Positions 1-20,236 of a stretch of 64,000 nucleotides of DNA are shown here, in pieces. The stretch's first letter is position 1; each line of letters opens with the position of its first letter. The stretch lies in the sequence record PV112478.1. One strand, written 5' to 3'. Position numbers and translations under genes: made by a program. The notes beneath the pieces were generated by a model. It was not told where the DNA came from and made no database searches. It saw nothing but the letters and a program-made list of their open reading frames with translations.

Positions 1-417
1 CAGCGGAACAGTGAAGGTTTGCTCTCCACCATTACTCAGTCCACCGTTATAAACCCACTGAACAATCGCACCCTTATCCTTCAGAGCTTTATTCAACAGC
101 GCGTAAGTACCGTAGGTGACTTGTTCGCTATTAGCATTCAACAACGGAGTTGCGCCGCCGGCACTATTAACCCAACCTTGAACATGTTCTTTAGTATCGT
201 CAGTGTAAACAAAGAACACATCACCGGGAACCGTTGCCGAAACACCCGCCACAGTACTCAAGTAGGCGTTCTCAAACATGATACTTTCACGTAACGCACG
301 GAGCGTTGTTTTATACGTGTCATTTTCTTCTTTAACTTGAGCAATGGGAATAAACCCATTCTCAGAGGCTACCGACAAAGCCGGTAATTCGGTAATCTTT
401 AAGCTAGACTTATCCAT
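1..417 (-). CDS. Tailspike/hub protein, N-terminal part (runs off the window edge; not in ORF track)
   Basis: Manual translation from ATG at 417: MDKSSLKITELPALSVASENGFIPIAQVKEENDTYKTTLRALRESIMFENAYLSTVAGVSATVPGDVFFVYTDDTKEHVQGWVN...WVYNGGLSNGGEQTFTVPL. The frame is open to base 1 and has the same anchor module as the neighbouring tailspikes. Confidence 0.9.
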   Translation of the reverse strand, partial: MDKSSLKITELPALSVASENGFIPIAQVKEENDTYKTTLRALRESIMFENAYLSTVAGVSATVPGDVFFVYTDDTKEHVQGWVNSAGGATPLLNANSEQVTYGTYALLNKALKDKGAIVQWVYNGGLSNGGEQTFTVPL

Positions 418-463
418 TTTGGTACCTGTATAGTCTGGGTAAATAAGAGGGTATCTAGATCGT

Positions 464-467
464 CATA
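464..467 (-). promoter_or_regulatory. Late-promoter-like TATG(AC)
   Basis: TTTTTATGACG lies 9 nt after the hairpin and upstream of the 417 gene. TATG is the phiKZ late promoter core. Confidence 0.55.
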
Positions 468-476
468 AAAACACAA

Positions 477-500
477 GAGTAGGGCCGATCGGCCCTACTC
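477..500. terminator. Perfect 24-bp palindrome, intrinsic terminator-like hairpin
   Basis: GAGTAGGGCCGATCGGCCCTACTC is self-complementary, intergenic and followed by a T-rich tract on the - strand. Confidence 0.75.
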
Positions 501-524
501 GCTATGAACAACCTATAAAACAAT

Positions 525-719
525 TCAACTACCGGAATCGTCTTCGCTAGTCCTGTCTTCTAAAAGAAAAGAACCATCCAGACCCTTTTCCGATAAGAAC
601 CCAAGTGCGGCTTCCTGATAGTTTTCTACTTCTTCAAAGAAAACGATAGCCTCCCCCAAATCAATTCTGGAAAGAAAATAAACGTTCTCTCGCACAGTAT
701 CCTTGTAGATATAAATCAT
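525..719 (-). CDS. Small acidic protein translationally coupled to a tailspike (possible assembly chaperone)
   Basis: TGATG stop/start overlap with the 719..2704 gene; 64 aa MIYIYKDTVRENVYFLSRIDLGEAIVFFEE... Confidence 0.6.
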   Translation of the reverse strand: MIYIYKDTVRENVYFLSRIDLGEAIVFFEEVENYQEAALGFLSEKGLDGSFLLEDRTSEDDSGS

Positions 720-2704
720 CACAAATACCCTAAAGTCGGATGTTGATCGGAAAACCAAACCGCGGGGAGCTTAACTTGAATAGTACCAACGAAACCAGTA
801 AAGTTAAGTCCAGCGTACCCATACTGGGATGTCCCGGTATCGCAAGACAACATGTAAGTGCCCATGTAATTGTCTGCGGTAAGGGTGATACCTGTTTTTG
901 TCAGCGAGTTTAAAATATCTTGCTGTGGACCTAGGGCATAGCCACTATAGTTTTCACTCATTGACACCACGTTAGTCGTGGCATTATTAGTAAAAGACTG
1001 AGATGAGACTAAACGACATACACCGCGTACGTAAACATTACCGGTAGTTGCGGAGCCAGCTTTGACCGAACAGGATACATGAAATTTCTGTTGGCTATTA
1101 CTGTTATTAATCGGCGTACCCCAGAGAAGGTTAACTGAGTTAGTTGTACTTGTGGCAGTGATTGTCACCGGGATCAAACCGTCAGAGTCTGCATCTGCTG
1201 CAGAACCGTAGACAATGGTTGAGCCGTTAGCAACTACGTACCATTGCCCAATCGCTCTGGCGGTCGGTAAGGCCGCACCCGCGGTACCATTAAATAATAA
1301 CCCGGTACTATTCAAAATGTAACCGTCTGTGGTATCGTAGGATGGCAGAAAACGATAGGTTTGTCCACGTAACGGGTAACGTATTCTGACTTTGATCAGG
1401 TTAGTGGGATCGTACGCCTTATAACTCCCATAAGCACTATTAACATGTGGGCCGTAACAGAAAATGTTTACGTTGTCAAGGTCGATAGCGGTGCGTGTAG
1501 TGGTCGCATAACCGATCGTTCTGACGCCGCGGTAAGGGTCGTTAACAAACGCGTACATGAAGATATTTCCGCCAATCATTTTAAAGTTATTTTCGCCAGC
1601 GCCAGTTGTACGAGATGGGCAGTTGACCAAATAGCGGAAACCTTCAACATGACATTCAATCAATGTATCTTGACCGATGTTCACTGGCGAATAAAAAACA
1701 ACATCATTTGTGTTATAGTCGAAACTACAACCAAAATATTTAAACATGTGGACAGTATCGTTTCGGTAAACCCCACCCAAATAGTTATCACCGATGAGGC
1801 AGTTAACAAAACGCATGTTCTCACCGGAGTTAACGCAGTTTGTACCGGCGTCAGTTACTACACCGTACGCGTTACGATAAAAATCACAATTCTCCACGAT
1901 ATCTAAATACGTATCGGTAGAACCTATCCTAATTCCACCGTAAAATTGCGCGACTTTTACACCCGTGATTTTTACTTCACGGACGTGAACATAACCACCA
2001 GACGGGTATGTTGTATTTCCTAAAGAAATACCGTGGAACGTAGTTTTGTCGTATCCGGGGCCTAAAATGAAAAGTGCGTTAGTGTCCAACACTTCGGTGT
2101 AGCTGGCAGAACTCCCTGCGTTATTAGTGAAGGGGTTTGCTGCGGATCGAGTAAGCCCAGTAAACTCGCCGGTTATTTCTACGCCGTTCCCGGTAGTAAA
2201 GGCACTAAAATCCCAAGTCTGGTTAGTGTCAACAATAACAGAAACAAACGGCGGAATACGCACTGTCGCTGTCATTTTATAAACGGTTTCGCCGGTAGCG
2301 TTATCTAACGGTGGTACACGCAACCGGTAAGTTCCATTTGCGATATAACCCCTGGCAATAACGACTTTGATGATGTCGCTGGTTATTTTATTAATACATT
2401 GCGCTAAATTATTCGCGGAAACCGAAAAACCGGCCATCCAGACGTTAATTGGTTTACTTGTGTCAAGTAGCCAGTTAGCTCCTTTGGTGGTTTTAAATAC
2501 GCTGTAGTCGTTATCTGCGGCCGTTGAACTCGCTCTGTACGTCATTATTTCGTTTACGTCAGGTCCGCCCACAACCGCTCGTTTTAGTAGAACGCGCTGA
2601 CCGTCAAACCAGGGTTCTAAAGACCGTAACTCAGTTACGGACCCCACGGTCAAAAGAGAATATTCCCCATTACTCCCTCGTGGCTTATTAAATTCAGTGA
2701 GCAT
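719..2704 (-). CDS. Tailspike/polysaccharide depolymerase (beta-helix) with a short TSP3-like head
   Basis: Head MLTEFNKPRGS; tailspike neck motif ELRSLEPWFDGQ; beta-helix motifs SGENMRFVNC and GCSFDYN; S/T/N/G-rich. Confidence 0.85.
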   Translation of the reverse strand: MLTEFNKPRGSNGEYSLLTVGSVTELRSLEPWFDGQRVLLKRAVVGGPDVNEIMTYRASSTAADNDYSVFKTTKGANWLLDTSKPINVWMAGFSVSANNLAQCINKITSDIIKVVIARGYIANGTYRLRVPPLDNATGETVYKMTATVRIPPFVSVIVDTNQTWDFSAFTTGNGVEITGEFTGLTRSAANPFTNNAGSSASYTEVLDTNALFILGPGYDKTTFHGISLGNTTYPSGGYVHVREVKITGVKVAQFYGGIRIGSTDTYLDIVENCDFYRNAYGVVTDAGTNCVNSGENMRFVNCLIGDNYLGGVYRNDTVHMFKYFGCSFDYNTNDVVFYSPVNIGQDTLIECHVEGFRYLVNCPSRTTGAGENNFKMIGGNIFMYAFVNDPYRGVRTIGYATTTRTAIDLDNVNIFCYGPHVNSAYGSYKAYDPTNLIKVRIRYPLRGQTYRFLPSYDTTDGYILNSTGLLFNGTAGAALPTARAIGQWYVVANGSTIVYGSAADADSDGLIPVTITATSTTNSVNLLWGTPINNSNSQQKFHVSCSVKAGSATTGNVYVRGVCRLVSSQSFTNNATTNVVSMSENYSGYALGPQQDILNSLTKTGITLTADNYMGTYMLSCDTGTSQYGYAGLNFTGFVGTIQVKLPAVWFSDQHPTLGYL

Positions 2705-2733
2705 TGTAACACCTCAAAATTGAAAGACTAAGT

Positions 2734-2737
2734 CATA
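2734..2737 (-). promoter_or_regulatory. Late-promoter-like TATG(AC)
   Basis: TTTTCTATGACT lies 4 nt after the hairpin, upstream of RBS GAGGTG and the ATG at 2704. Confidence 0.55.
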
Positions 2738-2741
2738 GAAA

Positions 2742-2772
2742 AATCAGAGGAGACGCATAGTCTCCTCTGATT
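2742..2772. terminator. Intrinsic terminator-like hairpin
   Basis: AATCAGAGGAGAC-GCATA-GTCTCCTCTGATT, 13-bp stem. Confidence 0.8.
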
Positions 2773-2778
2773 AATTTA

Positions 2779-5046
2779 CTACTCGTTAATAAACCAATGG
2801 ACGGGCGCTTTAACGTAGATAGTTCCTACTAACCCGGTGAAATTGATAGATACCGCTATTTGATCAGAATACGCAGCCTTCCTCACTGACATTGGGAATG
2901 CAATATAACCCACATCAGTTAAACCGGTTAATGCTTTCTTCTTATTAAAGTGAGCGTCTACTCCGACAGAGGTTCCCTGAGTATTCGCGATTTGAGATCG
3001 ACTTTCCGTGATAGTAGCGACGCTACCTGATACAGTACCGGAGTACGTTGGCGTGTCGTAGTATTTAATGTAGTTATAAAGATAAAGTCCGGGTGTATAG
3101 TCACTCCCTAATCTTACCGAAATTGCAGATGCAAAAAGTGGATTAAAGATATTCGCAGAATCGAATTTTTTCAAACATTCGAGAGTAATGATATTACTTG
3201 CTAAAGTGGAAGTGATTTTAATAGTCGCAAGGCCGTCTTCGTCCAAGGCGGCGAGTTTAGTGATAGTTACCCCTGTTCCCGTAAAACTAAACTTATGTTG
3301 AGTTCGAGTATCGGTTTGGTTGTTGAAATCAGTATCCGTTGCCACTGTATCCCATTTCCAGCGCCACCCCATCAAAGATTGTTGATAATCACTCAAAACA
3401 GGAGTAGTGGCGCGAAGGGAACCGGATGGTGCTAATGTATTGTATCCGCCCTTAACAACGCAAACAAACTGGTCCCCGGTATTATCTCCGTAACCAGCAA
3501 CGGTTCCCTGGCCTGTGAGGGAGTAATAAGGAGCCCAATAGTAATCCGATAAAGACCATGCGCACTCGTTGAATGTTACCCCAAGATCTTTTGTCGGACA
3601 AGAAATCATTTGGCGTGCGTGGTTCGCTCTAAAAGTGTCAGAGTAATAAGGAGAGGTGTACTGGTTAGGGTACATGTAGACGCCATTAAACATGAAAATG
3701 TTTCTAATATTCCATGTGTTACCCGGATAGATCTGCGTAAGCTGTGGCTGGTTTACCAACATATTACCAAAGCCTTCGATCCAACCTCTTTCCATCGTGA
3801 CACGTGTATTAGACGAATAAAGTGCACACCTAAAAACGTCCCCTGCTGTGTAATCCAAACTCGTGTCAATGATACTAACGATCGCGCCCTTATCAAACCA
3901 GAAATGAGCTGTGTCGTTATTCCCAATAACCCCGTTAATGAATACTACCTTTTCACCAGAGTTAACAATTGTTTGGTTAGTTTCGAACCACACTCCGATT
4001 TGGTTATTTGCAATATTGAAATCAGAAAAAGTATTGCAATAAAAGTTAATGTAGTTGATACGCAGACCGTACTTAAATCCTTCCACCCTGAAATTCTTGA
4101 CATTAAGATCCCTGACAGACATCGGGAGCGTTCCATAGGTGGCAATTCTAATACCCGCGGCGTTACTTGTTGACTTTCCTGGGCCTAAAATAAAGAAAGA
4201 CCCGCCATTAGCGTTAAAGAAATTCGACCCCTGAGTATCGACGAAATTACTATCCGGCATCTGGCCGGCTGCAACACCAGTGATACCTTCATTCGTGATA
4301 ACGATCGCGTCATCGTTTGTTAGAGAAGTAACTAAATAAATATTCCCATAAGAGACTAAAGAAAAGAACGAGGGGATTTTAACTTGTTTCTCTAGCACGT
4401 ATTTATCAGAAAACTGAGGAAAGAAAATCTGAGTGCTAACACCGAAAGTATTCTTGTTAGCAGAAACTTTGGCGGTAGTAAAATCAACAATTTTTTGGAT
4501 TGCGGCTCCTGTACCCGTACCGTCGCTTTTCACTCCGGCCAAACGAATATCTACCCCTTTAGAGACATCAACTTTCCAACGAGCACCTTTGGGAGTCACC
4601 ATAATTGAGAAGTCATTATCAGCGGAAGCAACGTCGCTAGAATCATAATTGGCAATAATATTGATTAGCGGACCGCCTTGTACAGCACGCTCTAAAATAA
4701 TTTTTTGTCCTGCGTACCACGGCTCAAATTTTCGCAGATCGGCGATAGTCGCGACAGATACTGTTGTCAGTGTAGATGGAAACGCCAGAACAGTAAAAGA
4801 ACCTGCGTTCGTAGTTACCGTGGCTGTGGTTCCGGTAACAGAAACGCCACTCACAACTCCGGTGATAGCGGTAGTATTAAAAATCTCTTTTGATTCTGGA
4901 AGAATAGCAAAAGAGTAATTTGTCAGGTCGTTACCGACTTCCAGTGAACCGATAGACGTTTGCGGGATGTTCAATAACTGAGAAAGAACCTCGCCGCTTG
5001 ATTGTACGGATGTACTTCCACCCGGCTGAATAAAATTAGTTTGCAT
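2779..5046 (-). CDS. Tailspike/polysaccharide depolymerase with a Kuttervirus TSP3-like head
   Basis: N-terminus MQTNFIQPGGSTS...GNDLTNY...TNAGS; neck DLRKFEPWYAGQ; beta-helix SGEKVVFING; C-terminus paralogous to 719..2704 (NFTGLVGTIYVKAP). Confidence 0.85.
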   Translation of the reverse strand: MQTNFIQPGGSTSVQSSGEVLSQLLNIPQTSIGSLEVGNDLTNYSFAILPESKEIFNTTAITGVVSGVSVTGTTATVTTNAGSFTVLAFPSTLTTVSVATIADLRKFEPWYAGQKIILERAVQGGPLINIIANYDSSDVASADNDFSIMVTPKGARWKVDVSKGVDIRLAGVKSDGTGTGAAIQKIVDFTTAKVSANKNTFGVSTQIFFPQFSDKYVLEKQVKIPSFFSLVSYGNIYLVTSLTNDDAIVITNEGITGVAAGQMPDSNFVDTQGSNFFNANGGSFFILGPGKSTSNAAGIRIATYGTLPMSVRDLNVKNFRVEGFKYGLRINYINFYCNTFSDFNIANNQIGVWFETNQTIVNSGEKVVFINGVIGNNDTAHFWFDKGAIVSIIDTSLDYTAGDVFRCALYSSNTRVTMERGWIEGFGNMLVNQPQLTQIYPGNTWNIRNIFMFNGVYMYPNQYTSPYYSDTFRANHARQMISCPTKDLGVTFNECAWSLSDYYWAPYYSLTGQGTVAGYGDNTGDQFVCVVKGGYNTLAPSGSLRATTPVLSDYQQSLMGWRWKWDTVATDTDFNNQTDTRTQHKFSFTGTGVTITKLAALDEDGLATIKITSTLASNIITLECLKKFDSANIFNPLFASAISVRLGSDYTPGLYLYNYIKYYDTPTYSGTVSGSVATITESRSQIANTQGTSVGVDAHFNKKKALTGLTDVGYIAFPMSVRKAAYSDQIAVSINFTGLVGTIYVKAPVHWFINE

Positions 5047-5060
5047 TTATTTTTCCTTTA

Positions 5061-5079
5061 AGGAGGGGAACCCCCTCCT
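5061..5079. terminator. Hairpin between tailspike genes
   Basis: AGGAGGGG-AAC-CCCCTCCT. Confidence 0.55.
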
Positions 5080-5083
5080 CCTT

Positions 5084-7840
5084 TTACTCTGTCTCAAAAC
5101 GGAATAGTGACAATCTAGATATGTTTACCGTACCTGTAATGTCAGAAAAAGTCGCTGCAACACGAGCAAACGCTGCGCCAACAGGTGCCCTTATTTTCAC
5201 CGGACTAGAAGCGATGAATCGTGTTGTACCGGCGGAGTAATTTGGTAGGGTAGTGTCGGAAAATACACTTCCCATCGCGGTGTTGTTACCGATTACTTGG
5301 CCACCAGATAATAATACTTTTTGATCATTGTAAAAATAAACGTATGGGGTAATACGGTTATTCCCCGTCGAGTTCAGTAGCTGCATTGCGGCAACAACCC
5401 CGAACGTATCTCCTGCTTTACAGGCAAAATACTCTGTTCCAACTAAAGTCACGTTACTCGCAGAACTTGTACCCGTTAAAGCAAGAACTTTACCTGTAAC
5501 ATCTGTTCTGTCGGCAATTACCCCTGTCATACCCGCGATGTATCCGACAGAAAATTTCGCTAACGTAGAGGAAGTACTCGTAACAGTTGTCCCAGTAGTT
5601 TCCGCACTGAAATCAAAACCGCTATTAATAATAGCGGCCGCGGACGGGACGTTAGGGTAGGGATCTTTCACATACCCACTAACCGCCACGGGTTTACCGG
5701 AAGAGTGTAAATAGAGATCTTCGGTATATGGTTTGACTTCGTGTTTGATCTCAGAGCCATTCCAATGCACTGCAACCTGGTTTCCGTTAAAGAGTGGTCG
5801 AGACGGGCTGTTGGCCAGTCCTAGTGTAGAGTCTGTTTTCTGACCAGAACGCAAACGAGGAAGGAAGTCGCAATTGGTAAAATAGACCGCACAGTTAGAC
5901 GGCGAGCCAACTACATCTAATACGTACCCATTCCAAGCTTCGGCGTGACAGTCAGTAAACTTAACTGCGTTATAACCAGACGATCCCGTAATGACTAATA
6001 TACTACCGTTAGTAAAGTCAAAGCTGCAGTTCATGAAAGAAACATCAAAACCAGGTGCTGCAAGATATACGTGATGTTCGTTGGTACCGCCAAATGTACA
6101 GTTAGTAAACGACATTCGTTCGCCGGAGTTACTGGACGTTGTAGACGGAACATTCAAACTGATACCGTTTTGTTCGAAACGACATTTAGTCGCTGAGAAT
6201 AGATAAGTATCAACGGAAGAAAACGTCAGTGCACGATAGCATTCGGTCACAACAACATTACGGAAAGAAACGTTTCTGGCGTTGGACATACTAGCTGCTT
6301 CGTTACCGATAAATATCCCAGAAAGAGTAGTTATAGCACGACCTTGCCCATCCAGTCGCAATACACCGCCATCAGCCGAAAGGTTCTCACCCTCCCAAAG
6401 ATTGACATTCGTTAAGGTGTCAGTATTTTGGAACTTGATCAGGTACGACCCTGTAAAGTTAGACGATGCAACAATGTTAACGTTACCTTTCGCAACGATA
6501 CTGATTGATGTCGGTGCGACAATTGTTGCAGATATCAGATAACTCCCGGCTGAAATGTTGATCGAAGGGCGACTGTAGAAATTAGTCCCTATTGTTAATT
6601 TCTGGACATATGCGATCGCACGTTGTAAAGGTACCGTGATATCTGTCCCTGGTTGAGCACCCCAAAATGCAACATTAATTTCTGAATTGGGGATAACACG
6701 TTCCCAATAGAAATTCCCACCAACAATGACTGTACCATAGTCTTCCGTCGCACCCCCGCCAATATGACCAATAAATTCCCCGCCGCCAATTTTAGTACCA
6801 GCTGCGTAAGATTTTACTTTAATACGTTCTCCCTCAAACCCCGGTTGACGGGACCGCAGTGAATCCACCGATTCCACGCCGTAAACCCCTTGAACGACTT
6901 GCTCTAAACTCACACCATAACTGGTATTGACCTTTGTCGCGCCCGTCGTTTGTCCCAGTGTCAAAAGAATTTCTGCTGGCGTTCCCGATACCTGTGCGGT
7001 GATGACCGACCGAGAGCCACCCAGTAAGACTTCAACAATGTCGTTAGTATTCAGCGCTTTCGAAAGGTTAATCTTCAATCCGGTGCTATCAACTTCATAG
7101 TGCTTATTCAGGACTTGTTTTGAGCCGTTGATGTAAATAGCAGGGATTGTTTTGAATGTCCACGGAGGAGTAAGTGACGTTTCTCCGCCCACCGCCGCGC
7201 CGTCATTATACAGCCACGTTACGTTGACGTAGTCGGTAATGCCAGGTTCTACTGGCGTGATAGGCGAACCCGGGTAAGGTCTCACGTAGAAGACAACGAA
7301 AGCACCCGCCGTTAACGGCCCTTTTAATTTGACTTTATTCGATAACCGATCAAATGTGTAGTTCAACCCCTTGAACTGATGACCACCGTTCAAGAACATC
7401 TCTGAGACATCGAAACAGTCGAAGGGCAATGCGATTTCCGTTTCGCCACCGTTAGCAGAACCGTTGTTATAAAGGTAACTGACGTATGACGTGTAGGAGC
7501 CGAACTTACCGTCCGCCATCATTTTTCCGGTACCGTAGATAACCGGAGTATTGTCCTTATAGACAGCCGTGGCAGAGGCACCGTTGACGTTAATAAACGC
7601 TGCAGCGTAGAATTGGCTATCGTCAGTATAGACGTAAAAGATTTCATCTTTGACAGTAGCCGCAATACCTTCTGCGAGGGTTTCAAAAGCATTTTCAAAG
7701 AGAAGATTTGATCGAAGATTATTTAACGTGGTACGATATGTTTCATTTTCTGCTCCCGCTACTGCCACTGGCAATAGAGCAGATTCTGGAACAATACCCT
7801 TACTCGAAAGTTCGGAAATTTTTCTTGTGTTATTGGCCAT
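5084..7840 (-). CDS. Hub tailspike: anchor module, two XD-like (GGET) branching modules, neck domain and beta-helix depolymerase
   Basis: Likely start MANNTRKISEL at 7840 (RBS GAGG; the ORF track start at 7885 overlaps the TATG motif). FENAF; YNNGSANGGETEIALPF and YNDGAAVGGETSLTPPW; LRSRQPGFEGER..GGGEF..YWERV; SGERMSFTNC. Confidence 0.88.
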   Translation of the reverse strand: MANNTRKISELSSKGIVPESALLPVAVAGAENETYRTTLNNLRSNLLFENAFETLAEGIAATVKDEIFYVYTDDSQFYAAAFINVNGASATAVYKDNTPVIYGTGKMMADGKFGSYTSYVSYLYNNGSANGGETEIALPFDCFDVSEMFLNGGHQFKGLNYTFDRLSNKVKLKGPLTAGAFVVFYVRPYPGSPITPVEPGITDYVNVTWLYNDGAAVGGETSLTPPWTFKTIPAIYINGSKQVLNKHYEVDSTGLKINLSKALNTNDIVEVLLGGSRSVITAQVSGTPAEILLTLGQTTGATKVNTSYGVSLEQVVQGVYGVESVDSLRSRQPGFEGERIKVKSYAAGTKIGGGEFIGHIGGGATEDYGTVIVGGNFYWERVIPNSEINVAFWGAQPGTDITVPLQRAIAYVQKLTIGTNFYSRPSINISAGSYLISATIVAPTSISIVAKGNVNIVASSNFTGSYLIKFQNTDTLTNVNLWEGENLSADGGVLRLDGQGRAITTLSGIFIGNEAASMSNARNVSFRNVVVTECYRALTFSSVDTYLFSATKCRFEQNGISLNVPSTTSSNSGERMSFTNCTFGGTNEHHVYLAAPGFDVSFMNCSFDFTNGSILVITGSSGYNAVKFTDCHAEAWNGYVLDVVGSPSNCAVYFTNCDFLPRLRSGQKTDSTLGLANSPSRPLFNGNQVAVHWNGSEIKHEVKPYTEDLYLHSSGKPVAVSGYVKDPYPNVPSAAAIINSGFDFSAETTGTTVTSTSSTLAKFSVGYIAGMTGVIADRTDVTGKVLALTGTSSASNVTLVGTEYFACKAGDTFGVVAAMQLLNSTGNNRITPYVYFYNDQKVLLSGGQVIGNNTAMGSVFSDTTLPNYSAGTTRFIASSPVKIRAPVGAAFARVAATFSDITGTVNISRLSLFRFETE

Positions 7841-7882
7841 TGCAAGAAACCTCATTGTCGGCAATAGGGCTGTAAAAATAGT

Positions 7883-7886
7883 CATA
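7883..7886 (-). promoter_or_regulatory. Late-promoter-like TATG(AC)
   Basis: TTTGTTTTCCTATGAC lies 10 nt after hairpin 7897-7924. Confidence 0.55.
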
Positions 7887-7896
7887 GGAAAACAAA

Positions 7897-7924
7897 TAGA
7901 GAGGAGCCAAAAGGCTCCTCTCTA
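7897..7924. terminator. Intrinsic terminator-like hairpin
   Basis: TAGAGAGGAGCC-AAAA-GGCTCCTCTCTA, 12-bp stem. Confidence 0.8.
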
Positions 7925-7933
7925 GAGTTTATT

Positions 7934-9901: not shown

Positions 9902-9927
9902 TATACTACCCTCAAGTGAAAGAATCT

Positions 9928-9931
9928 CATA
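9928..9931 (-). promoter_or_regulatory. Late-promoter-like TATG(AG)
   Basis: TTTTGTTTCGTATGA, identical to the motif at 12307-12321 on the + strand. Confidence 0.6.
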
Positions 9932-9938
9932 CGAAACA

Positions 9939-9970
9939 AAAGAGAAGAGGGCTAAGACCCTCTTCTCTTT
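9939..9970. terminator. Intrinsic terminator-like hairpin
   Basis: AAAGAGAAGAGGG-CTAAGA-CCCTCTTCTCTTT, 13-bp stem. Confidence 0.8.
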
Positions 9971-9976
9971 ATTAGA

Positions 9977-12190
9977 TTACCAACTAGAAAGAGCAGCTCT
10001 TACCCAAGTATTTGTTGCGATACAGACGTAGTAATAACTACTATCAGCCGCCCATTGTCCTACAGTACCGGGAGCTGTTGCATTAGCAGGTACTGCGACT
10101 TTAACGCCAACTGGATTCCCTGCCACGGTTATGGCTCTTGAAAAATAACCATCCCGCCACTGAAGAGCACTTGTCCCAAAATCATAAAGGTTCGTCGCAT
10201 TAGGGACTACTGTCCCCATGAAGTTGAACTGACTGGCGCCTCCGTTAGCAACAAAATTCATACCGGATAAATAACTGGTTATTGTCATCGGTCCGGTGTT
10301 ACCAAGTAAGATTCTACCCCCTAAAGTCGTGTTACCGTAAGGATAAAAATCCAGTCTCCTGTCTCCACTTGTAGTGTTATTATTTCCTATTTGGAGAATA
10401 TTACCACTGGAGATAGAGGCTGTTGTTTTAATAAGGTAACCGCTTATCGTCCCATCCTGAGCCACCGAAAGAATAGGTGTTGTCGGGTTGAAAGCACCAT
10501 CTGTATTGGTGTAATAAATAGAAAGGGCGCTGTTATTATCGCTATCCACATCGATAATAAATTTTCTCGTCGCTACTTTGACGTCGTTAATGATCAGGCC
10601 GCTAGTAATTCTTCTCGTAAAGTTATTGATGGCGCAGTTTATCAGCTGATAAGCTCTTTTACCTTGTGTACTAGCGCTGACGTCAAAGATAGGGGCTACT
10701 GTAGAGTTACCGGAAACTTCAGAGAATGCGCTGGAGAAATAACAGCTATCGAAAACACGCCCGGTATTAGTACTTGTACCAAATCTAATCATTGGTACGT
10801 GGACAGCGCTGTCATAACCAACTGCGGACTTTCTTAAAGTTTGGAAAGTACATCCAGTGAATTTAATAATCCCTTGGTTGATGAATCCTAATTCGTAAGT
10901 GCCCGCTGAATCTGTTCCGCCAGAACCATTATCGGTAAAAATTACTGTATCGAAATTAAACTGCGTACCGCCGCCCAAATTAAACCATTTTGCACCGTAG
11001 AAGTGAGTCTCAATATGACCGCCTTCAAATTTAATGTTGTGGTGCGTACTGGAGGTAGGAGTTGGGTCTACTTTAATAGCTACGTAGTTTTTAGTGTACG
11101 TCGTTTCAATGTGCGGTCTGATGAACACAATGTTGTTGGAGTTGTCCGTGGCCTGAGGTAAGAAATGAATCCCCGTAGCAGGATTATTTGTATCATTATC
11201 ATCAACGGCAACAAACCCAGTCATGTAGATACAGTCGAAAACCGCATCGTAACACTGACCGAATGTTAAAGCTTTAGTGGGCGACATGAAGTTAAGGTTT
11301 GAAAATCTTCCACCGACAGCCATTGAGTTAGCGGTCACTTCACTTCCGAGTTTAATGTAATAAGCAAAAATACCCGGCTCTTTAATAAAAGTTAACCCGT
11401 CCATTTCAAGACGGCCGCCCGTGAAAGTAAAGAGAAAATCTTTATTCACGTTAGAAGAAATATAAGCGCCTTTTCCTAGAATCCTAAACCTTGGTTTTCC
11501 AGTCTCATAAGTGATGGCACTTAGGTCTTTAACTATTTTACTGTCGAGTCGATATTTACCTGGCGGGAAGAATAACCACCCCGAGGCATACCGTTGAGCG
11601 TTAGAGATATTGATTTCTTTTTGATAAATACATTTATCTATTGCTGCGCTAACCGCCGGAGACCAATCCCAAGTAGAGGGGTCATTAGGATTATCTTTTT
11701 TGGTGACTAGACTTGAAAACTCCCAAATATTGATAGGTAGGCTATTTAATGCTTTAGCCGCGCTCTCCGCGCTTAACTCGATCTCTTTACGTTGATAGCC
11801 AACTTCATCAGCCCCATTATTAGACATAATTCCATCAACGTCACCACGAATTACTTTTATACCGTAACCGGTATAATTAATTTTAGCAGTACCGTCCGAG
11901 TTAAAAATCTGTTCTGCAACTCCGTTGCGGTTGACATATGCTTTAACTGTCGTTTTTTCTGCGTCGGCATAAACGTAGAAAATTTGATTAGGAACAGTAC
12001 CCGCAAGACCCGCTACTGTCGTAGTGAATGCGTTTTCGAAATTTAGCAGGGAGCGTAAATCAGAAATCTCCATCGCTTTAGATTCGGTTATTCCCGCTTC
12101 ATTCTGAGCGATAAATACGACATCAGAATCATTTACCGGTTTCGATGGTCGATCCATTTCACTGAGTTTTACAAAGATCTCACTGGCCAT
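9977..12190 (-). CDS. Tailspike/depolymerase with anchor module
   Basis: KLSEM...DLRSLLNFENAF; NIWEF..DPSTWDWSPAVSAAI and LFFPPGKY tailspike entry motifs; beta-helix body; C-terminal VPANATAPG..GQ..YYYVCIATNTWVR. Confidence 0.88.
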   Translation of the reverse strand: MASEIFVKLSEMDRPSKPVNDSDVVFIAQNEAGITESKAMEISDLRSLLNFENAFTTTVAGLAGTVPNQIFYVYADAEKTTVKAYVNRNGVAEQIFNSDGTAKINYTGYGIKVIRGDVDGIMSNNGADEVGYQRKEIELSAESAAKALNSLPINIWEFSSLVTKKDNPNDPSTWDWSPAVSAAIDKCIYQKEINISNAQRYASGWLFFPPGKYRLDSKIVKDLSAITYETGKPRFRILGKGAYISSNVNKDFLFTFTGGRLEMDGLTFIKEPGIFAYYIKLGSEVTANSMAVGGRFSNLNFMSPTKALTFGQCYDAVFDCIYMTGFVAVDDNDTNNPATGIHFLPQATDNSNNIVFIRPHIETTYTKNYVAIKVDPTPTSSTHHNIKFEGGHIETHFYGAKWFNLGGGTQFNFDTVIFTDNGSGGTDSAGTYELGFINQGIIKFTGCTFQTLRKSAVGYDSAVHVPMIRFGTSTNTGRVFDSCYFSSAFSEVSGNSTVAPIFDVSASTQGKRAYQLINCAINNFTRRITSGLIINDVKVATRKFIIDVDSDNNSALSIYYTNTDGAFNPTTPILSVAQDGTISGYLIKTTASISSGNILQIGNNNTTSGDRRLDFYPYGNTTLGGRILLGNTGPMTITSYLSGMNFVANGGASQFNFMGTVVPNATNLYDFGTSALQWRDGYFSRAITVAGNPVGVKVAVPANATAPGTVGQWAADSSYYYVCIATNTWVRAALSSW

Positions 12191-12316
12191 AATTGTACCT
12201 TACTTTGTCTCTAATAGTCAATTGTACATACGATTGACAGCTTGAAAGAATACGTTTCGGTTTATTATACATTAACTAGAGAAGGATGCGGAAAAGCTCC
12301 TCTCTGTTTTGTTTCG

Positions 12317-12320
12317 TATG
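12317..12320 (+). promoter_or_regulatory. Late-promoter-like TATG(AC)
   Basis: TTTTGTTTCGTATGAC follows an imperfect hairpin (12277-12306), upstream of RBS GGAG and the ATG at 12352. Confidence 0.6.
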
Positions 12321-12351
12321 ACCATTTTCAAATAATAACCGGAGTTAGATA

Positions 12352-14910
12352 ATGTCCGATATTTTTTCTCAAAAGATCTCTGAGTTACAGTCCAGTACAG
12401 GGCCGAGCGAAAACGCTTATTTCCCTCTCTCTGAAGCCAATAGCGACTTCTCAGAAAAAGTGAGTGTCGCCACCTTAAGGGAAACTATTGGTTTTGAGAA
12501 TGCTTTCCCTACCGTCGCTATTGCGTTACTGGCGACTAAAGAAAGTGACGTCTTCTTCGTCTATGAAAACGAAAAGAAAGAAAACGTTTTGGGTTATGTC
12601 AATCAGGGTAATGGAAATTATTCCGCTTTGATGACCGATAGTAACGTGCAACTGCGCTACGCTACGAGTAGTTTCATTGTTAATAGCTTATTCTTTTTGC
12701 GTGGGGCGGAAAGTTTCGAAGAGCTTAGAACAATTAAACCGTGGTACGAAGGACAACGCATTAAACTTAAAAGCTACTACGTTGACGGTTTAACAGGTGG
12801 CGGTGAGTTTGTTGCGCGGTTGACTGTTGGTGTAGATGACAGTGGTGTCATCGCAGCAGGGTCGGGATTCTATTGGGAACGTGTACTCACCGATCCGGTG
12901 ATCTATCCTGAATATTTTGGCGCCGATACCTCGTTATCTGATAATAGTACGGCACTTAGCACCACCTTTAATTACGCCATCGCCAATAAAAAATCGGTCT
13001 GCATTAAAGCGAACATCAAAGTTTCTACGGTAACCATCGCTGGATTTAATTTCACTATTTTTGGGCCGGGGACAATGACCTTCTCTGACCCAAATGGACT
13101 TGTTATCAGTAACGGAAACGCCGGTATTATCGACGGGCCTGCTCTCGTTTTTTCCGGGGTAGGTTCAACTGGAATTACCGTAACGGGCTCTAACAATGTC
13201 GTGGTTCGAAACTGTACTATTTCGAATCATGGTCGAAATGGTGGGGTCTACATTTTAAACTCCAGCAATGTGATGGTCTCCAAGAATACTTTCCTGAACG
13301 CAGCGGGTGATGCGACGTTTGGATCCTCTACCACCGCTGATGTCAATATCTGGGGGACGAATAACGGTTGTTCCGTGGTAGATAACCGGTTTATCTCTGG
13401 AGGTGGCTACGCTATTCAGATTCGTTCGCACGCGTTAGGGGATGTTTCAGTTAATCACGTCATCTCAAGAAACTTCATTGACGGTTACAACAGTTACGGA
13501 ATTAACTGCTACCGAAATAAACAATCGTTGACGGATACGCAGGTATTGAAAAATGTTATTGTTTCTGAAAACGTTATCAGTAACATTTCAGGTAATCGTC
13601 CAAGTAACCCAGCTACTCCCGATGTGTTAATCTTCGGTACTGGCATCTACATGCAAGGCTCCGAAATGTCAACGGTTGTCAATAACACAATCACTAATGT
13701 GTGTACCAACTCTAACAATGACTTGCTGGCGCCTGCCGGAATTGGGGTCACCAACATCGGTAATATTAATATCGCCAACAACACCATTGTCAACTCGGGG
13801 ATGTACGGTATTAAAATCAACGACTCTGTCGGTTTAGGCGATGTTTACGGGCGAGTGATTGTTGAGAGTAATATTATTGACACAGTCGGTACCGATGGCA
13901 TCATGGTCCAGGATCGCAATAACATTTCAGTAACCAACAACTCCATTAAAGGCGCTGCTCGTGACGGAATTAAAATCAATACTTCTCCGTCAAGTCAAAC
14001 CAAAGTAGTTTCCACCGATAAAAAGATTTCCTTTAACAGCCTCAAAACCATCACGGGGATCGGAATCTATATCGAATATTCTCAAAGCTGGTCTATTGAA
14101 AGTAACTGTGTTACCGATTGTGCTCAGGGGTTAGTTTTCCAGTACAGTGCGCACGGTAGAGTGATAGGTAATACTATCGTTAATGCCTCTACGCGGGGCT
14201 ACTACGCACATGTGACAAACACCACACCGGGATCAATCATTTTTACTGAAAATAAATGCTTGAATACCGTCACGCAAATTGCTGTCGAACATCCGATTGA
14301 CTACTACAACAACCCGCAATTGACACCGACGGGGACGTACGCTAATGCGAGAGAAATTACAGCGGATTTACCAGATGTTACGGGTTGCGAAGTCCTGAAT
14401 TTAAAACCCACCGCAGCGATGAATCTGACTGGATTTGCAGGCGGGAAAATTGGGCAGCGCATTACCATATGGGTAAATAATGCATTGGTAACAATGGTAC
14501 AGAGTGGCTCCTTTATTCTAGCTGGGTTGAAAAATAGAAACCCGGGCTATAACAGCGCTGTAACGTTTGTGAAAACAAAAGCAGGGTGGGTCGAAGTAGC
14601 ACAAAGTGGGTACGCAGTCGCTTACATTAACCCAACGTCTGGGAGTTCCGTTACTGTCAGTGACTATACTGGAGGAATCTACATCCAAGGTAGTAGTGCA
14701 CTAGCTAGTCTTTCGGTTACGTTACCTGCTTCCCCCGTGGACGATCAAGTCTGTACTATTTGTTCTCAGAGTGGCGTTACGGCATTGACATTGACGGCAA
14801 ATACGGGACAAAGTATTTTCCCTCCGACCACACCGACTGCCCTTTCTGCGGGCATTTCTATTCAGTATCGGTATCGGGCGGCGGCTAACGGCTGGTTCCG
14901 CTATCAGTGA
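12352..14910 (+). CDS. Tailspike/depolymerase with anchor module, neck domain and right-handed beta-helix
   Basis: KISELQ...TLRETIGFENAF; ELRTIKPWYEGQ..GGGEF..YWERV; many N/I/G beta-helix repeats (NVIVSENVISN, NTIVNSGMYGI); C-terminal TLPASPVDDQ domain. Confidence 0.88.
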   Translation: MSDIFSQKISELQSSTGPSENAYFPLSEANSDFSEKVSVATLRETIGFENAFPTVAIALLATKESDVFFVYENEKKENVLGYVNQGNGNYSALMTDSNVQLRYATSSFIVNSLFFLRGAESFEELRTIKPWYEGQRIKLKSYYVDGLTGGGEFVARLTVGVDDSGVIAAGSGFYWERVLTDPVIYPEYFGADTSLSDNSTALSTTFNYAIANKKSVCIKANIKVSTVTIAGFNFTIFGPGTMTFSDPNGLVISNGNAGIIDGPALVFSGVGSTGITVTGSNNVVVRNCTISNHGRNGGVYILNSSNVMVSKNTFLNAAGDATFGSSTTADVNIWGTNNGCSVVDNRFISGGGYAIQIRSHALGDVSVNHVISRNFIDGYNSYGINCYRNKQSLTDTQVLKNVIVSENVISNISGNRPSNPATPDVLIFGTGIYMQGSEMSTVVNNTITNVCTNSNNDLLAPAGIGVTNIGNINIANNTIVNSGMYGIKINDSVGLGDVYGRVIVESNIIDTVGTDGIMVQDRNNISVTNNSIKGAARDGIKINTSPSSQTKVVSTDKKISFNSLKTITGIGIYIEYSQSWSIESNCVTDCAQGLVFQYSAHGRVIGNTIVNASTRGYYAHVTNTTPGSIIFTENKCLNTVTQIAVEHPIDYYNNPQLTPTGTYANAREITADLPDVTGCEVLNLKPTAAMNLTGFAGGKIGQRITIWVNNALVTMVQSGSFILAGLKNRNPGYNSAVTFVKTKAGWVEVAQSGYAVAYINPTSGSSVTVSDYTGGIYIQGSSALASLSVTLPASPVDDQVCTICSQSGVTALTLTANTGQSIFPPTTPTALSAGISIQYRYRAAANGWFRYQ

Positions 14911-14936
14911 ATCAAAAGACTAAGATAATATAATAC

Positions 14937-14966
14937 AATCGAAGGAGGCTAACTCCTCCTTCGATT
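14937..14966 (+). terminator. Intrinsic terminator-like hairpin
   Basis: AATCGAAGGAGG-CTAACT-CCTCCTTCGATT followed by TTT. Confidence 0.8.
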
Positions 14967-14970
14967 TTTA

Positions 14971-14974
14971 TATG
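14971..14974 (+). promoter_or_regulatory. Late-promoter-like TATG(AC)
   Basis: TTTTTATATGAC lies 4 nt after the hairpin, upstream of the ATG at 15000. Confidence 0.55.
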
Positions 14975-14999
14975 ACTACCTCCATTCAGGATTAAAGAC

Positions 15000-16922
15000 A
15001 TGTCTAATGAAACGCAGAAAATTAGCGAGTTAACAACAACGAGTATTATCCCTGAAAAATCACTTATACCCGTAGTGGCGGATAATCTCCTGACTAATTC
15101 CGTAGATATTACCACATTACGATCCACCCTTAATTTTGAAAATGCTTTTTCTACTATAAATGAAGGCATTGCCGCAACTAATAAAAATGACCCGTTCTTT
15201 GTTTACGAGGATACTGAAAGGTTTTCTGTCGTCGGTTATGTTAATCAAGGAGGCGGGTCGTATTCCTTATTAGTCGATGGTGACGGGAAACAGGTTTCTT
15301 TTGCTACATCGAATGCAACCACTGACGCAATGAAAGAAAAAAGAGTCAGATCGAAACTCTTTATTTACGCTGAAGCAGAGGGTGTTGTCAATGACTCCAG
15401 TATTGATTCATCGGATGCTTTACAGGCACTTGTGGACAAATACAAAGGTATCAGAATAATCCTCCCACCTAGTATCATGATTAAGAAAACAATAAAGTAT
15501 TATACGCAAACTATTATTTCAGGAATTGCGGAAACGAGGAGTATTATTTGGGCTGGCGCCGGGTTCGTTGGATCCAGTATGTTTGAGCCGGCAACGACAA
15601 CAAAACAATCTGTCCAAGAACCTGATTTCTCCGATCTTACTTTAGCCGATCAAAGTGCAACAAACGTCAACCGCGGAACTTCTTCTGCGATTAATGGTAT
15701 TGAGCTTGTTGGGACGTTTGTTGCAAAAGTGGAAAATATAAAAGGTGTTCGTTTGAATGCGACGATCCACTGTAATGTCGGCACTGAGATTCAGCACACA
15801 ATGCGCCCTTATATACGTCGTATTAATGGATCGAATGTCAACTGGCATATTTTGTTCGAACCTACAACCGATGATCGATTTGCATATGGAGATGTGTATC
15901 TATCTGATATTAAAACATCTGGTAGTTGCATGAACGGAATAAGGGTTCGTGATACTGACGGTTTACAAATCAACGGCGCGGTTATTTTCCCTAACGGGGG
16001 TATTGAAATTTCTGGTCATTACCTTAATCTTTCAAATATTCATCCGTTCGAATCTAAATCTATTTTAGGTGATACTAGAATACCTGCGGCAATAACTATT
16101 CTACCCCGTGGCCCCAATACCTATAGCCGTTTTATTAATGTTCATGGCGTTGCTAGCGGGTTTGCTGGGAGATTAGCTGACACAACTATCGGGAATCCTG
16201 CGCAAACTAATAATCCCGCCCCGGGAATCTACATGGAAATGTGTTTGAACTTTAATGTTTCATTTACGGTTAATCAGTCAGCGCAAGAAGCTTTACGATT
16301 AGTAAATTGTCAAAATGGTACTTTTTCTTTCTCTAGTCTTGATGTTAATACACAGGCACTCGGTTCCGGTAAGTTACCGGAAGGTACTTACGATGTAGTG
16401 AAACTGGAAAGTTGTAAATTTATTAATGGTATTTTTACTGATATTTCCGCAAGTCGTAGATATGCGGTTTACCTCGATGATAACTGCGTAAATAATAACA
16501 TTGTAGGTACTTGTTCTCGAGGTCTCATACTCGGCCAAAACGTTAGATTACCCACTAATGGTAATTTTAATTACGTTAAAATCATTAGTGAGAATTCAAC
16601 TGGATCAACTACATTCGAACAGAAAAAACCATCTGCGAGCATTCAGACAATCTCGGATGGGTTGGCCACTCCCGAGACTCCTAATATTTCAAACAACGAT
16701 GTTATTAAATTTAACAATTCAGTAGTGACTAATGTCACTGATTTACCTAGTATTGGAAATTATCAGTCGGTCACTGTAGTGTTAAGTGATAACAATGCAA
16801 CGCGTTTAGTTGATGTCGCCAACGGCGGGAAATTTAGTCTTGGTGGGGCAAACATCATGGGAAGAGGTACCGTTTTACGTCTCTATCGCGACGATTTAAG
16901 CGGGAACCTTATTAAATATTAA
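15000..16922 (+). CDS. Tailspike/depolymerase with anchor module
   Basis: KISELT...TLRSTLNFENAF; entry motif DSSDALQAL..IILPP; beta-helix-like body; AT-rich. Confidence 0.85.
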   Translation: MSNETQKISELTTTSIIPEKSLIPVVADNLLTNSVDITTLRSTLNFENAFSTINEGIAATNKNDPFFVYEDTERFSVVGYVNQGGGSYSLLVDGDGKQVSFATSNATTDAMKEKRVRSKLFIYAEAEGVVNDSSIDSSDALQALVDKYKGIRIILPPSIMIKKTIKYYTQTIISGIAETRSIIWAGAGFVGSSMFEPATTTKQSVQEPDFSDLTLADQSATNVNRGTSSAINGIELVGTFVAKVENIKGVRLNATIHCNVGTEIQHTMRPYIRRINGSNVNWHILFEPTTDDRFAYGDVYLSDIKTSGSCMNGIRVRDTDGLQINGAVIFPNGGIEISGHYLNLSNIHPFESKSILGDTRIPAAITILPRGPNTYSRFINVHGVASGFAGRLADTTIGNPAQTNNPAPGIYMEMCLNFNVSFTVNQSAQEALRLVNCQNGTFSFSSLDVNTQALGSGKLPEGTYDVVKLESCKFINGIFTDISASRRYAVYLDDNCVNNNIVGTCSRGLILGQNVRLPTNGNFNYVKIISENSTGSTTFEQKKPSASIQTISDGLATPETPNISNNDVIKFNNSVVTNVTDLPSIGNYQSVTVVLSDNNATRLVDVANGGKFSLGGANIMGRGTVLRLYRDDLSGNLIKY

Positions 16923-16926
16923 AAGC

Positions 16927-16958
16927 ACAGACAGAGGGGCTCCTGCCCCTCTGTCTGT
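16927..16958. terminator. Bidirectional terminator hairpin between convergent genes
   Basis: ACAGACAGAGGGGC-TCCT-GCCCCTCTGTCTGT, 14-bp stem. Confidence 0.85.
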
Positions 16959-19837: not shown

Positions 19838-20236
19838 TTACTCAGCTTCTTTCTGTCCTTGGAGTTTCCACCGTGGGATTGAAGGGTTCGTAGAAGCTTC
19901 GATATAATCTACGAGGGCCGTGTTTACGTAAAAAAGATTACGATAAACATAAACCCAATCAATCGATACGCGTCTGTACTCTTTAGCACCTTTATTAGAA
20001 ATAAGATGCCCTGTTTCGGAGATAATACACGAGATAGCTCGAGTTAATTCAAAATCGTTAATTTTGCTATCAAGTACCCGAACTGACGCTATTACTTCTT
20101 CAAGTAATTTAAGATGCGCGAACTGGCCAAAGCGTCCTTCGGGCAGAATAATAAAGTCAGCTACCCGAAGACGGAGATCAGCTACCTGGTTTATAGCTGT
20201 AATAAAATCATTTTGAACGGAATTTTCTTCAAGCAT
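19838..20236 (-). CDS. Hypothetical protein (AT-rich, early-type promoter)
   Basis: 132 aa, RBS AGGAG, TATATCAC motif upstream. Confidence 0.75.
   Translation of the reverse strand: MLEENSVQNDFITAINQVADLRLRVADFIILPEGRFGQFAHLKLLEEVIASVRVLDSKINDFELTRAISCIISETGHLISNKGAKEYRRVSIDWVYVYRNLFYVNTALVDYIEASTNPSIPRWKLQGQKEAE

What the first reader, a model, noticed from the sequence alone, without database searches (positions are those of the whole stretch)
1..16922. Six tailspikes share one N-terminal anchor module of about 100 aa (KI(S/T)EL...LR..FENA(F/Y)...FFVY)
Seen: genes starting at 417, 7840, 9901, 12190, 12352 and 15000 all begin K(I/L)(S/T)E(L/M)-x20-30-LR..(L/I).FENA(F/Y)..G...T...(V/I/P)F(F/Y)VY and continue into different receptor-binding bodies. 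The synonymous positions are divergent, so these are old paralogs. Inference: a common virion socket accepts interchangeable spikes, either as a multi-host arsenal on one particle or as heterogeneous particles. With the two dependent spikes, this window encodes at least eight depolymerase-type RBPs.
Basis: partly seen in the sequence, partly recalled or inferred. Interest (0 to 1): 0.8.

Follow-up and report, generated by a model that had tools for sequence, protein, structure and literature searches.

The report
Shared anchor domain on phage tailspikes
A giant Klebsiella phage carries a row of capsule-degrading tail spikes that all start with the same small attachment domain; this is real, but it belongs to a multi-spike system already described for a sister phage.

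Summary
The window is Klebsiella jumbo phage LPKP23, a relative of phiKp24 (vB_KpM_FBKp24), which is known for "hyperbranched" tail fibres.

Six spike genes begin with one homologous domain of about 110 aa. It corresponds to Pfam PF27114 "Phage_tail_beta" and PHROG 27731. The copies are about 34% identical, and their synonymous sites are saturated.

The whole genome has eight copies. Relatives, all jumbo phages of 273-307 kb infecting Klebsiella, Serratia or Pectobacterium, have 6-10 copies each.

The fold is predicted with confidence and has no solved structural counterpart. It is not a T4 gp10-like domain.

The "one socket, interchangeable spikes" reading is only partly supported:
- Each gene position keeps its own anchor lineage: 51-98% identity within a position, 27-50% between positions.
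- What gets exchanged between phages is the enzyme body, at recurrent junctions just after the N-terminal structural part.
- Two anchors are followed by one and two gp10-like docking domains. The spikes without the module are encoded directly downstream of these.
- Some relatives keep body-less 180-aa "stubs" in one position.

The binding partner was not identified, and attachment to the virion is inferred rather than shown. I rate this a new member of a known kind, of moderate interest.

The parts
1..417 (-). Spike A (position 1, counterpart of phiKp24 gp301). Only the first 139 codons are in the window: the anchor module (88-417) and the start of one T4 gp10-like domain. The full gene is 1304 aa, at L001:15504-19418(-).
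   Evidence: Peptidase_S74 near the C-terminus
525..719 (-). Small 64-aa ORF between spikes A and x, the counterpart by position of phiKp24 gp302. No family match.
719..2704 (-). Spike x (661 aa), without the module. It is the second gene downstream of B. Its body is homologous to y and to the beta-helix region of B.
   Evidence: no Pfam or PHROG hit
2779..5046 (-). Spike y (755 aa), without the module. It is the first gene downstream of B. Its N-terminal ~105 aa resemble those of z, the module-less spike downstream of A.
5084..7840 (-). Spike B (918 aa, position 2, counterpart of phiKp24 gp306). Anchor module at 7511-7840, two T4 gp10-like domains at about 6986-7513, then a beta-helix body.
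7934..9901 (-). Spike C (655 aa, position 3). Anchor module at 9572-9901.
9977..12190 (-). Spike D (737 aa, position 4). Anchor module at 11861-12190.
12191..12351 (.). Divergent intergenic region between D (-) and E (+). It has promoter-like sites on both strands. phiKp24 has annotated divergent promoters at the same place.
12352..14910 (+). Spike E (852 aa, position 5). Anchor module at 12352-12681. The conserved N-terminal part runs to about residue 176. The body is a right-handed beta-helix.
15000..16922 (+). Spike F (640 aa, position 6). Anchor module at 15000-15329.
477..500 (-). One of seven strong intergenic stem-loops that separate the spike genes. The others are at 2742-2772, 5061-5079, 7897-7924, 9939-9970, 14937-14966 and 16927-16958. 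Several coincide with the 3' limits of the swapped bodies.
16968..17534 (-). 188-aa DUF7941 (PF25613) virion structural protein that flanks the spike cluster in all relatives. A candidate partner, untested.

Best explanation
The six genes are paralogous tail-spike genes of a phiKp24-like jumbo myophage; the window is Klebsiella phage LPKP23.

Their shared ~110-aa N-terminus is a compact alpha/beta domain (Pfam PF27114, PHROG 27731) confined to this phage clade. It most likely forms the end of each trimeric spike that attaches to the virion.

It is probably not one interchangeable plug. Each gene position has its own long-diverged anchor lineage, which suggests several related but distinct attachment sites filled in parallel on every particle.

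The exchangeable part is the enzyme body. Recombination between phages replaces it at recurrent junctions, just after the N-terminal structural part and at the hairpin after the stop codon. The cluster therefore alternates conserved linkers (hairpin plus anchor) with variable cassettes (bodies).

Two anchors (A and B) are extended by one and two T4 gp10-like docking domains. The module-less spikes encoded directly downstream probably hang on these, giving a second tier.

Shown here: homology, age, position-specific lineages, junctions, domain content, distribution. Inferred: attachment to the virion, parallel distinct sites, and docking of x, y and z on the gp10-like domains.
For: - Identity of the phage and synteny with phiKp24 gp300-gp314.
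- Homology and age of the module.
- Family: PHROG 27731 matches all six. PF27114 is precomputed on homologues and is listed first on an 852-aa homologue of spike E, consistent with an N-terminal position.
- Distribution: only 131 clusters among 1.84 billion proteins, nearly all with the domain starting at residue 1. 23 phage records carry it, all jumbo phages of 273-307 kb, with 6-10 copies each.
- Fold: compact, pLDDT 86.5, no PDB counterpart, and confident BFVD matches (E <= 0.001) only within the same clade.
- Not gp10-like by profile comparison.
- Position-specific lineages and position-specific columns.
- Bodies unrelated within a position while the anchors stay 87-98% identical.
- Recurrent junctions near window 6870-6876, 9555-9567, 11912-11927 and 12881, and at the 3' hairpins.
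- gp10-like domains: exactly three in the genome, one on A and two on B, matching solved tailspike and tail-fibre N-terminal parts. B is followed by two module-less spikes in every relative whose fetched locus reaches them.
- Moabite has eight module spikes and no gp10-like domain in a 40-kb locus, so the module's partner is not a gp10-like domain.
- Slot-5 stubs: four variants, all 180 aa, 76-87% identical to each other. The anchor part is therefore kept without a body.
- Published support: N-termini of Klebsiella depolymerases serve attachment, and 11 of 14 phiKp24 receptor-binding proteins are active enzymes.
Against: - No direct evidence that the module contacts the virion. No virion proteomics were found for this clade.
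- The partner was not identified. No large structural gene varies with the anchors, although anchors at positions 2, 4, 5 and 6 differ by 28-42% between phages that are otherwise about 98-99% identical. That fits a tolerant or generic socket.
- No protein with internal repeats that could offer many sockets was found, at BLAST sensitivity only.
- Position-specific clustering could simply reflect vertical inheritance and homologous replacement within a syntenic cluster.
- Moabite anchors do not map one-to-one onto the Klebsiella-phage positions.
- In several relatives A is followed by two module-less spikes but has only one gp10-like domain, so the count of docking sites against dependants is not exact.
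- The structure is a monomer prediction.
Confidence: 0.55

Rival explanations
1. One common socket. All anchors bind the same kind of site through the residues they share. Occupancy is competitive, so particles are mixed or heterogeneous.
For: - Eleven columns are at least 90% conserved across all positions (14 invariant among the six in the window).
- Anchor variants only 58-72% identical work with a virion core that is about 98-99% identical, and nothing was found that varies with them.
- The number of module genes varies from 5 to 10 between relatives without obvious compensating changes.
Against: - Distinct position-specific lineages are kept across two genera.
- 27 position-specific columns.
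- Synonymous sites are saturated and there is no gene conversion, despite frequent recombination next door.
- A body-less stub kept at constant length in one position is hard to explain if any other spike could fill that site.
Confidence: 0.2
2. Hierarchical hyperbranching, the published phiKp24 model. gp306 (B) alone contacts the baseplate, and the other module-bearing spikes dock on the gp10-like domains of B and A.
For: The model of Ouyang et al. [quoted passage not shown]
Against: - The genome has only three gp10-like domains but eight module genes.
- A and B carry the same module themselves.
- Module-less spikes sit directly downstream of A and B and are the more natural clients.
- Moabite has eight module spikes and no gp10-like domain in the locus, even at E <= 10.
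- The module shows no profile similarity to gp10-like domains.
Confidence: 0.12
3. The module is a folding or trimerisation nucleus, or a handle for an assembly chaperone, and does not bind the virion. Attachment is through the neck or other proteins.
For: The predicted monomer is a self-contained globular domain that ends in a helix leading into the neck. No partner was found.
Against: - Beta-helix spikes generally trimerise through the helix and C-terminal parts, and their N-termini are the attachment parts (literature summarised).
- x, y and z fold without the module.
- Stubs that keep only the anchor and neck would have nothing to fold.
- The module sits in A and B exactly where solved relatives have their N-terminal part before the gp10-like domains.
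Confidence: 0.08

Closest known systems
Hyperbranched tail-fibre system of Klebsiella jumbo phage phiKp24 / vB_KpM_FBKp24 (Ouyang et al. 2022, PMC9700779)
   Same: The gene cluster is the same, in the same order: counterparts of gp300-gp314. There are two proteins with T4 gp10-like domains, beta-helix depolymerase bodies and a flanking DUF7941 protein. In phiKp24 the module is present in gp301, gp306-310 and gp312.
   Different: Most bodies differ; LPKP23 keeps only some (x, y, D and the N-terminal parts). [quoted passage not shown] Its main text does not use the word 'conserved' and does not mention gp312. The data here favour parallel mounting of the module-bearing spikes over a single primary fibre.
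Branched tailspike complexes of Ackermannviridae phage CBA120 (TSP1-4) and of N4-like phage G7C (gp66/gp63.1)
   Same: N-terminal structural part followed by T4 gp10-like docking domains and then a beta-helix body. Dependent spikes are encoded next to the carrier. The gp10-like region of B matches solved tailspike and tail-fibre chains (7rej/7rfo, 9d80, 9d83, 7xy1, 6w4q). Assigning 7rej/7rfo to CBA120 TSP4 is from my memory, not from a tool.
   Different: Those matches start at about residue 100 and do not cover the module. There is no Pfam hit to a tailspike N-terminal family. Foldseek gives only a weak match (E 0.05) to a 'TSP1/Gp66 N-terminal domain' protein. Here the anchor is multiplied 6-10 times per genome.
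T4 baseplate protein gp10
   Same: B reads anchor, then two gp10-like domains, then a distal body. This is the same order as the gp10 domains, whose first domain binds the wedge and whose next two bind other fibres (established knowledge, not tested here).
   Different: No sequence or profile similarity between the module and gp10-like domains. The distal part is an enzyme.
Multi-depolymerase jumbo phages PhiK64-1 / RaK2 and the Menlow group (Latka et al. 2019; Pan et al. 2017)
   Same: Many depolymerase spikes on one particle give a broad capsule range. N-termini are conserved while central domains are swapped.
   Different: Different phage lineages. The PF27114 profile found only 131 protein clusters, and all 23 phage-collection records matched by one module belong to the phiKp24/Moabite clade.
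P22-type tailspike head-binding domain (PF09008)
   Same: A conserved N-terminal particle-binding domain of about 100 aa, followed by exchangeable beta-helix bodies.
   Different: The six modules do not match it. A separate 751-aa spike elsewhere in the same genome does.

Membership tests
PF27114 Phage_tail_beta / PHROG 27731 | Match to the family profile over the N-terminal ~105 residues | tested here: met
   PHROG 27731 matches all six (E 4e-12 to 7e-20). PF27114 is not in the local Pfam copy (no hit). It is precomputed on homologues, including 180-aa proteins that are little more than the module, and is listed first on an 852-aa homologue of spike E.
phiKp24-type multi-spike cluster | Synteny and orthology with phiKp24 gp300-gp314 | tested here: met
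   Same order, strands and lengths. DNA is 90% identical over the 40% of the region that matches, and the flanking genes are shared.
phiKp24-type multi-spike cluster | Two carrier proteins with T4 gp10-like docking domains | tested here: met
   One domain in A and two in B. PDB sequence hits at E 1e-29 to 5e-8. HMM counts.
phiKp24-type multi-spike cluster | Beta-helix depolymerase bodies with enzymatic activity | tested here: inconclusive
   Beta_helix/NosD is clear in E. B, C and F have weak hits below the Pfam cut-off. x, y and D have no Pfam hit, but x and y are homologous to the helix region of B. Activity cannot be tested here; it is reported for 11 of 14 phiKp24 proteins.
phiKp24-type multi-spike cluster | The proteins are part of the virion | not testable with these tools
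   No proteomics found in the papers read.
CBA120 / G7C-type branched tailspike complex | An N-terminal anchor homologous to the TSP / gp66 N-terminal domains | tested here: not met
   No Pfam hit. PDB sequence hits begin after the module. Foldseek: nothing in the PDB and E 0.05 in BFVD.
T4 gp10-like domain | The module itself is a diverged gp10-like domain | tested here: not met
   hhalign probability 0.2%.
P22 Head_binding (PF09008) | Profile match at the N-terminus | tested here: not met
   No hit for the six or for x, y and z. The family is detected in another spike of the same genome, so the test works.

The most novel reading that the evidence does not exclude
The PF27114 anchors define a way of arming a contractile tail that has not been described. 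A baseplate periphery would offer six to ten related but distinct sockets per sector, filled in parallel by paralogous anchors. Body-less stubs would serve as blanks that keep a socket occupied. The gene cluster would be laid out as hairpin-plus-anchor linkers that act as fixed homology arms for swapping enzyme cassettes. This would replace the published single-primary-fibre hierarchy for this clade.
Probability: 0.3. Interest if true: 0.65.

Novelty: new member of a known kind. Interest (0 to 1): 0.4.

Why it matters
These phages have some of the widest capsule ranges known for Klebsiella. How a dozen enzymes are mounted on one tail is still unresolved; the only model rests on the lengths of the N-terminal parts.

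Recognising one clade-specific anchor domain gives three things:
- A clear marker for finding and counting spikes in this clade. The marker picks up phiKp24 gp312, which is not among the 14 fibres the paper lists.
- A map of where bodies are exchanged in nature.
- A concrete structural question: what does PF27114 bind?

It does not change the general picture of modular receptor-binding proteins.

Tried and rejected
- First AlphaFold run with six sequences: pLDDT 63, and its Foldseek search of the PDB was meaningless.
- Better model (pLDDT 86.5): still no PDB counterpart. The best hits were SH2-like at E 0.65 and TM <= 0.3, which I treat as noise.
- PDB sequence search with the module profile: only the gp10-like tail of the alignment matched.
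- Paper search for PDB codes 9D80-9D84: only chance strings. I could not learn which phage 'Gp49' and 'Tail fiber protein' come from.
- Paper search for PF27114: nothing.
- Module against gp10-like domains by hhalign: no relation. The tool printed a short consensus line by itself, which I did not use. The same applies to the consensus lines printed by the alignment tool.
- Search for the socket by co-variation (LPKP23 against KpZh_1, piece by piece): no structural gene varies with the anchors.
- Search for a multi-socket protein through internal repeats: none at BLAST sensitivity.
- One-to-one orthology between Moabite anchors and the Klebsiella-phage positions: not found.
- Matching the number of gp10-like domains to the number of module-less spikes: exact in LPKP23 for x, y and z, but not in relatives where two genes follow A.
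- Exact look-up of spike E: not on record.
- Alignment A3 was too large for structure prediction.
- Record bases 100001-104999 of LPKP23 were not fetched and so were not scanned.
Full report
**What the window is.** The first 40 kb of the window are 100% identical to Klebsiella phage LPKP23 (PV112478.1, 300,747 bp), placing the window at record 124001-188000. The nearest relatives are KpLz-2_45 (genus Siatvirus) and several unannotated 'Kp...' records, about 99% identical outside the spike region. vB_KpM_FBKp24 (phiKp24, genus Maaswegvirus) is about 77% identical there. phiKp24 is the jumbo myophage described as using 'hyperbranched tail fibers', with 14 predicted depolymerase fibres (Ouyang et al. 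2022).

**The observation.**
- The window holds large ORFs at 719-2704, 2779-5046, 5084-7885 (gene start 7840), 7934-9901 and 9977-12190 on the minus strand, and at 12352-14910 and 15000-16922 on the plus strand. One more gene starts at 417 and runs off the left edge.
- Every pair is significant by BLASTP, and in 13 of the 15 pairs the similarity stops at about residue 100-115.
- Module DNA is 45% identical. Third positions of identical amino acids with at least four codons agree no more than chance (0.31 against 0.27). No shared run exceeds 15 nt.
- The observation and the 'old paralogs' statement are therefore confirmed.

**What the module is.**
- The local Pfam copy has no family for it. 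PHROG 27731 (function unknown) matches all six.
- The protein database carries a precomputed PF27114 'Phage_tail_beta' on homologues. It is listed first on an 852-aa homologue of spike E, and it is the only family on 180-aa proteins that are little more than the module.
- A profile search of 1.84 billion representative proteins found only 131 clusters, nearly all with the domain starting at residue 1.
- In the phage collection, 23 records carry it. All are genomes of 273-307 kb from phages of Klebsiella, Serratia or Pectobacterium, with 6-10 places each.
- With a 118-sequence alignment AlphaFold gives a compact alpha/beta domain (pLDDT 86.5) that ends in a helix leading into the neck.
- Foldseek finds nothing in the PDB (best E 0.65). 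In BFVD its confident matches (E <= 0.001) are only proteins of the same clade.
- It is not a diverged T4 gp10-like domain (hhalign probability 0.2%).

**The rest of the system.**
- A piecewise scan of the LPKP23 record found eight module genes. Six are in the cluster. The other two are an 881-aa spike at record 42672-45317 and a 207-aa module-only protein at record 33903-34526. Bases 100001-104999 were not scanned.
- Exactly three T4 gp10-like domains exist: one directly after the module in A and two after the module in B. They match solved tailspike and tail-fibre N-terminal regions at E 1e-29 to 5e-8, and those matches begin only after the module.
- The spikes without the module lie directly downstream of these carriers: y and x after B, and a 592-aa spike (z) after A.
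- In phiKp24 numbering the module is in gp301, gp306, gp307, gp308, gp309, gp310 and gp312. gp300, gp303, gp304 and gp313 lack it.

**Position-specific lineages and cassette exchange.**
- I extracted 48 modules from eight relatives. They cluster by gene position, not by phage: 51-98% identity within a position against 27-50% between positions.
- Of 106 columns, 11 are conserved everywhere and 27 are conserved within positions but differ between them.
- Within a position the bodies are often unrelated while the anchors stay 87-98% identical.
- DNA comparisons with seven relatives give recurrent junctions:
  - about 6870-6876, after B's module and two gp10-like domains;
  - about 9555-9567, after C's module;
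  - about 11912-11927, within D's module at about residue 90;
  - about 12881, residue 176 of E;
  - on the other side, at the gene ends: 5048-5061, 7907-7931, 9943-9974 and 16908-16923.
- Strong stem-loops sit at those gene ends (35 terminator-like sites against 15.9 expected).
- The cluster therefore alternates conserved linkers (hairpin plus anchor) with variable cassettes (bodies).
- Anchors themselves sometimes travel with a cassette. LPKP23's anchors at positions 2 and 5 are closer to phiKp24's (94% and 93%) than to those of its near-identical relative KpZh_1 (72% and 65%).

**Looking for the partner.**
- LPKP23 and KpZh_1 differ almost only in spike bodies and a few small genes. No large structural gene varies with the diverged anchors.
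- No large protein has BLAST-detectable internal repeats.
- Serratia phage Moabite has eight module-bearing spikes and no gp10-like domain in its 40-kb locus, even at E <= 10. The partner is therefore not a gp10-like domain.
- Moabite anchors show no one-to-one relation to the Klebsiella-phage positions.
- A 188-aa DUF7941 protein flanks the cluster in all lineages. The same domain heads two conserved proteins of about 690 aa at the other end. These are candidates only.

**Stubs.**
- In two metagenome contigs, position 5 is occupied by a 180-aa protein that equals the first 174 residues of a position-5 spike.
- Four such variants exist, all 180 aa, 76-87% identical to each other.
- Constant length across that much divergence suggests that the anchor-plus-neck part is kept for its own sake.

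**Interpretation.**
- The module is most likely the virion-attachment end of the spikes. This rests on position, on analogy with other tailspikes and on the stubs. It has not been shown directly.
- The data lean towards several related but distinct sites filled in parallel, plus a second tier on the gp10-like domains of A and B.
- A single generic socket is not excluded, because diverged anchor variants serve nearly identical virion cores.
- The published hierarchy with gp306 as the only primary fibre fits poorly with eight modules against three docking domains, and with Moabite.

**Novelty.** Already known are the phage clade, the multi-spike apparatus, the gp10-like branching and the general rule of conserved N-termini with swapped bodies. 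The domain also has a Pfam entry. What appears not to be spelled out in the papers read is:
- that half of the fibres share one clade-specific anchor;
- that the anchors form position-specific lineages;
- where the junctions lie;
- that stubs exist.

I rate this a new member of a known kind, of moderate interest.

Noticed in passing
window 16968-17534 (-); L001:7895-9964 (-) and L001:9981-12023 (-): A second shared N-terminal domain, DUF7941 (PF25613; PHROGs 2935/1037/3589 'virion structural protein'). It stands alone in the 188-aa protein next to the spike cluster, and it heads the two conserved proteins of about 690 aa (phiKp24 gp294/gp295 counterparts) at the other end. The same flanking layout occurs in Serratia phage Moabite. 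These genes are about 94% identical between LPKP23 and KpZh_1, against about 99% for the core.
   Followed up: partly
L012:13571-15826 (+) (record 63571-65826): A 751-aa tail spike far from the cluster carries a P22-type Head_binding domain (PF09008, E 7e-15). The whole gene is replaced in the near-identical phage KpZh_1.
   Followed up: partly
L011:33903-34526 (-) and L011:42672-45317 (+): Two further module genes lie outside the window. One is a 207-aa module-only protein, the most divergent copy, next to a relA-like gene and 98% conserved in KpZh_1. The other is an 881-aa spike whose first ~174 residues are conserved and whose body is swapped.
   Followed up: partly
L023:10001-10543 (+); L024:4681-5223 (+): Body-less 180-aa 'stubs' occupy spike position 5 in metagenome relatives. 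There are four variants of identical length.
   Followed up: yes
window 477-500, 2742-2772, 5061-5079, 7897-7924, 9939-9970, 14937-14966, 16927-16958: Long GC-rich stem-loops sit in nearly every gap between spike genes. Terminator-like sites number 35 against 15.9 +/- 3.5 expected. Several mark the 3' limits of swapped cassettes.
   Followed up: partly
window 19838-20236 (-): A 132-aa gene just beyond the cluster has no alignment at all in KpZh_1, while both flanks are 94-99% identical. phiKp24 has a 216-aa gene at this place.
   Followed up: no
P0104 (950 aa), P0139 (523 aa): Metagenome proteins contain two to four internal copies of the second half of the module (profile positions ~50-93). 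That half can therefore occur as a repeat unit away from the N-terminus. Neither protein has a Pfam hit.
   Followed up: partly
L014:19160-19243 (-) (record 257160-257243): The GenBank record annotates a 'tRNA-Stop(tta)' among a block of ten tRNA genes, possibly a suppressor tRNA.
   Followed up: no
window 26145-30632 (-); L015:8761-9729 (-): Split multisubunit RNA polymerase genes and a tubulin-like gene, features seen in phiKZ-like, nucleus-forming jumbo phages.
   Followed up: no
records MN871447-MN871453: Several close relatives are deposited as 'Serratia phage Kp...' and marked UNVERIFIED, although the stated host is Klebsiella pneumoniae. The organism names look wrong.
   Followed up: no
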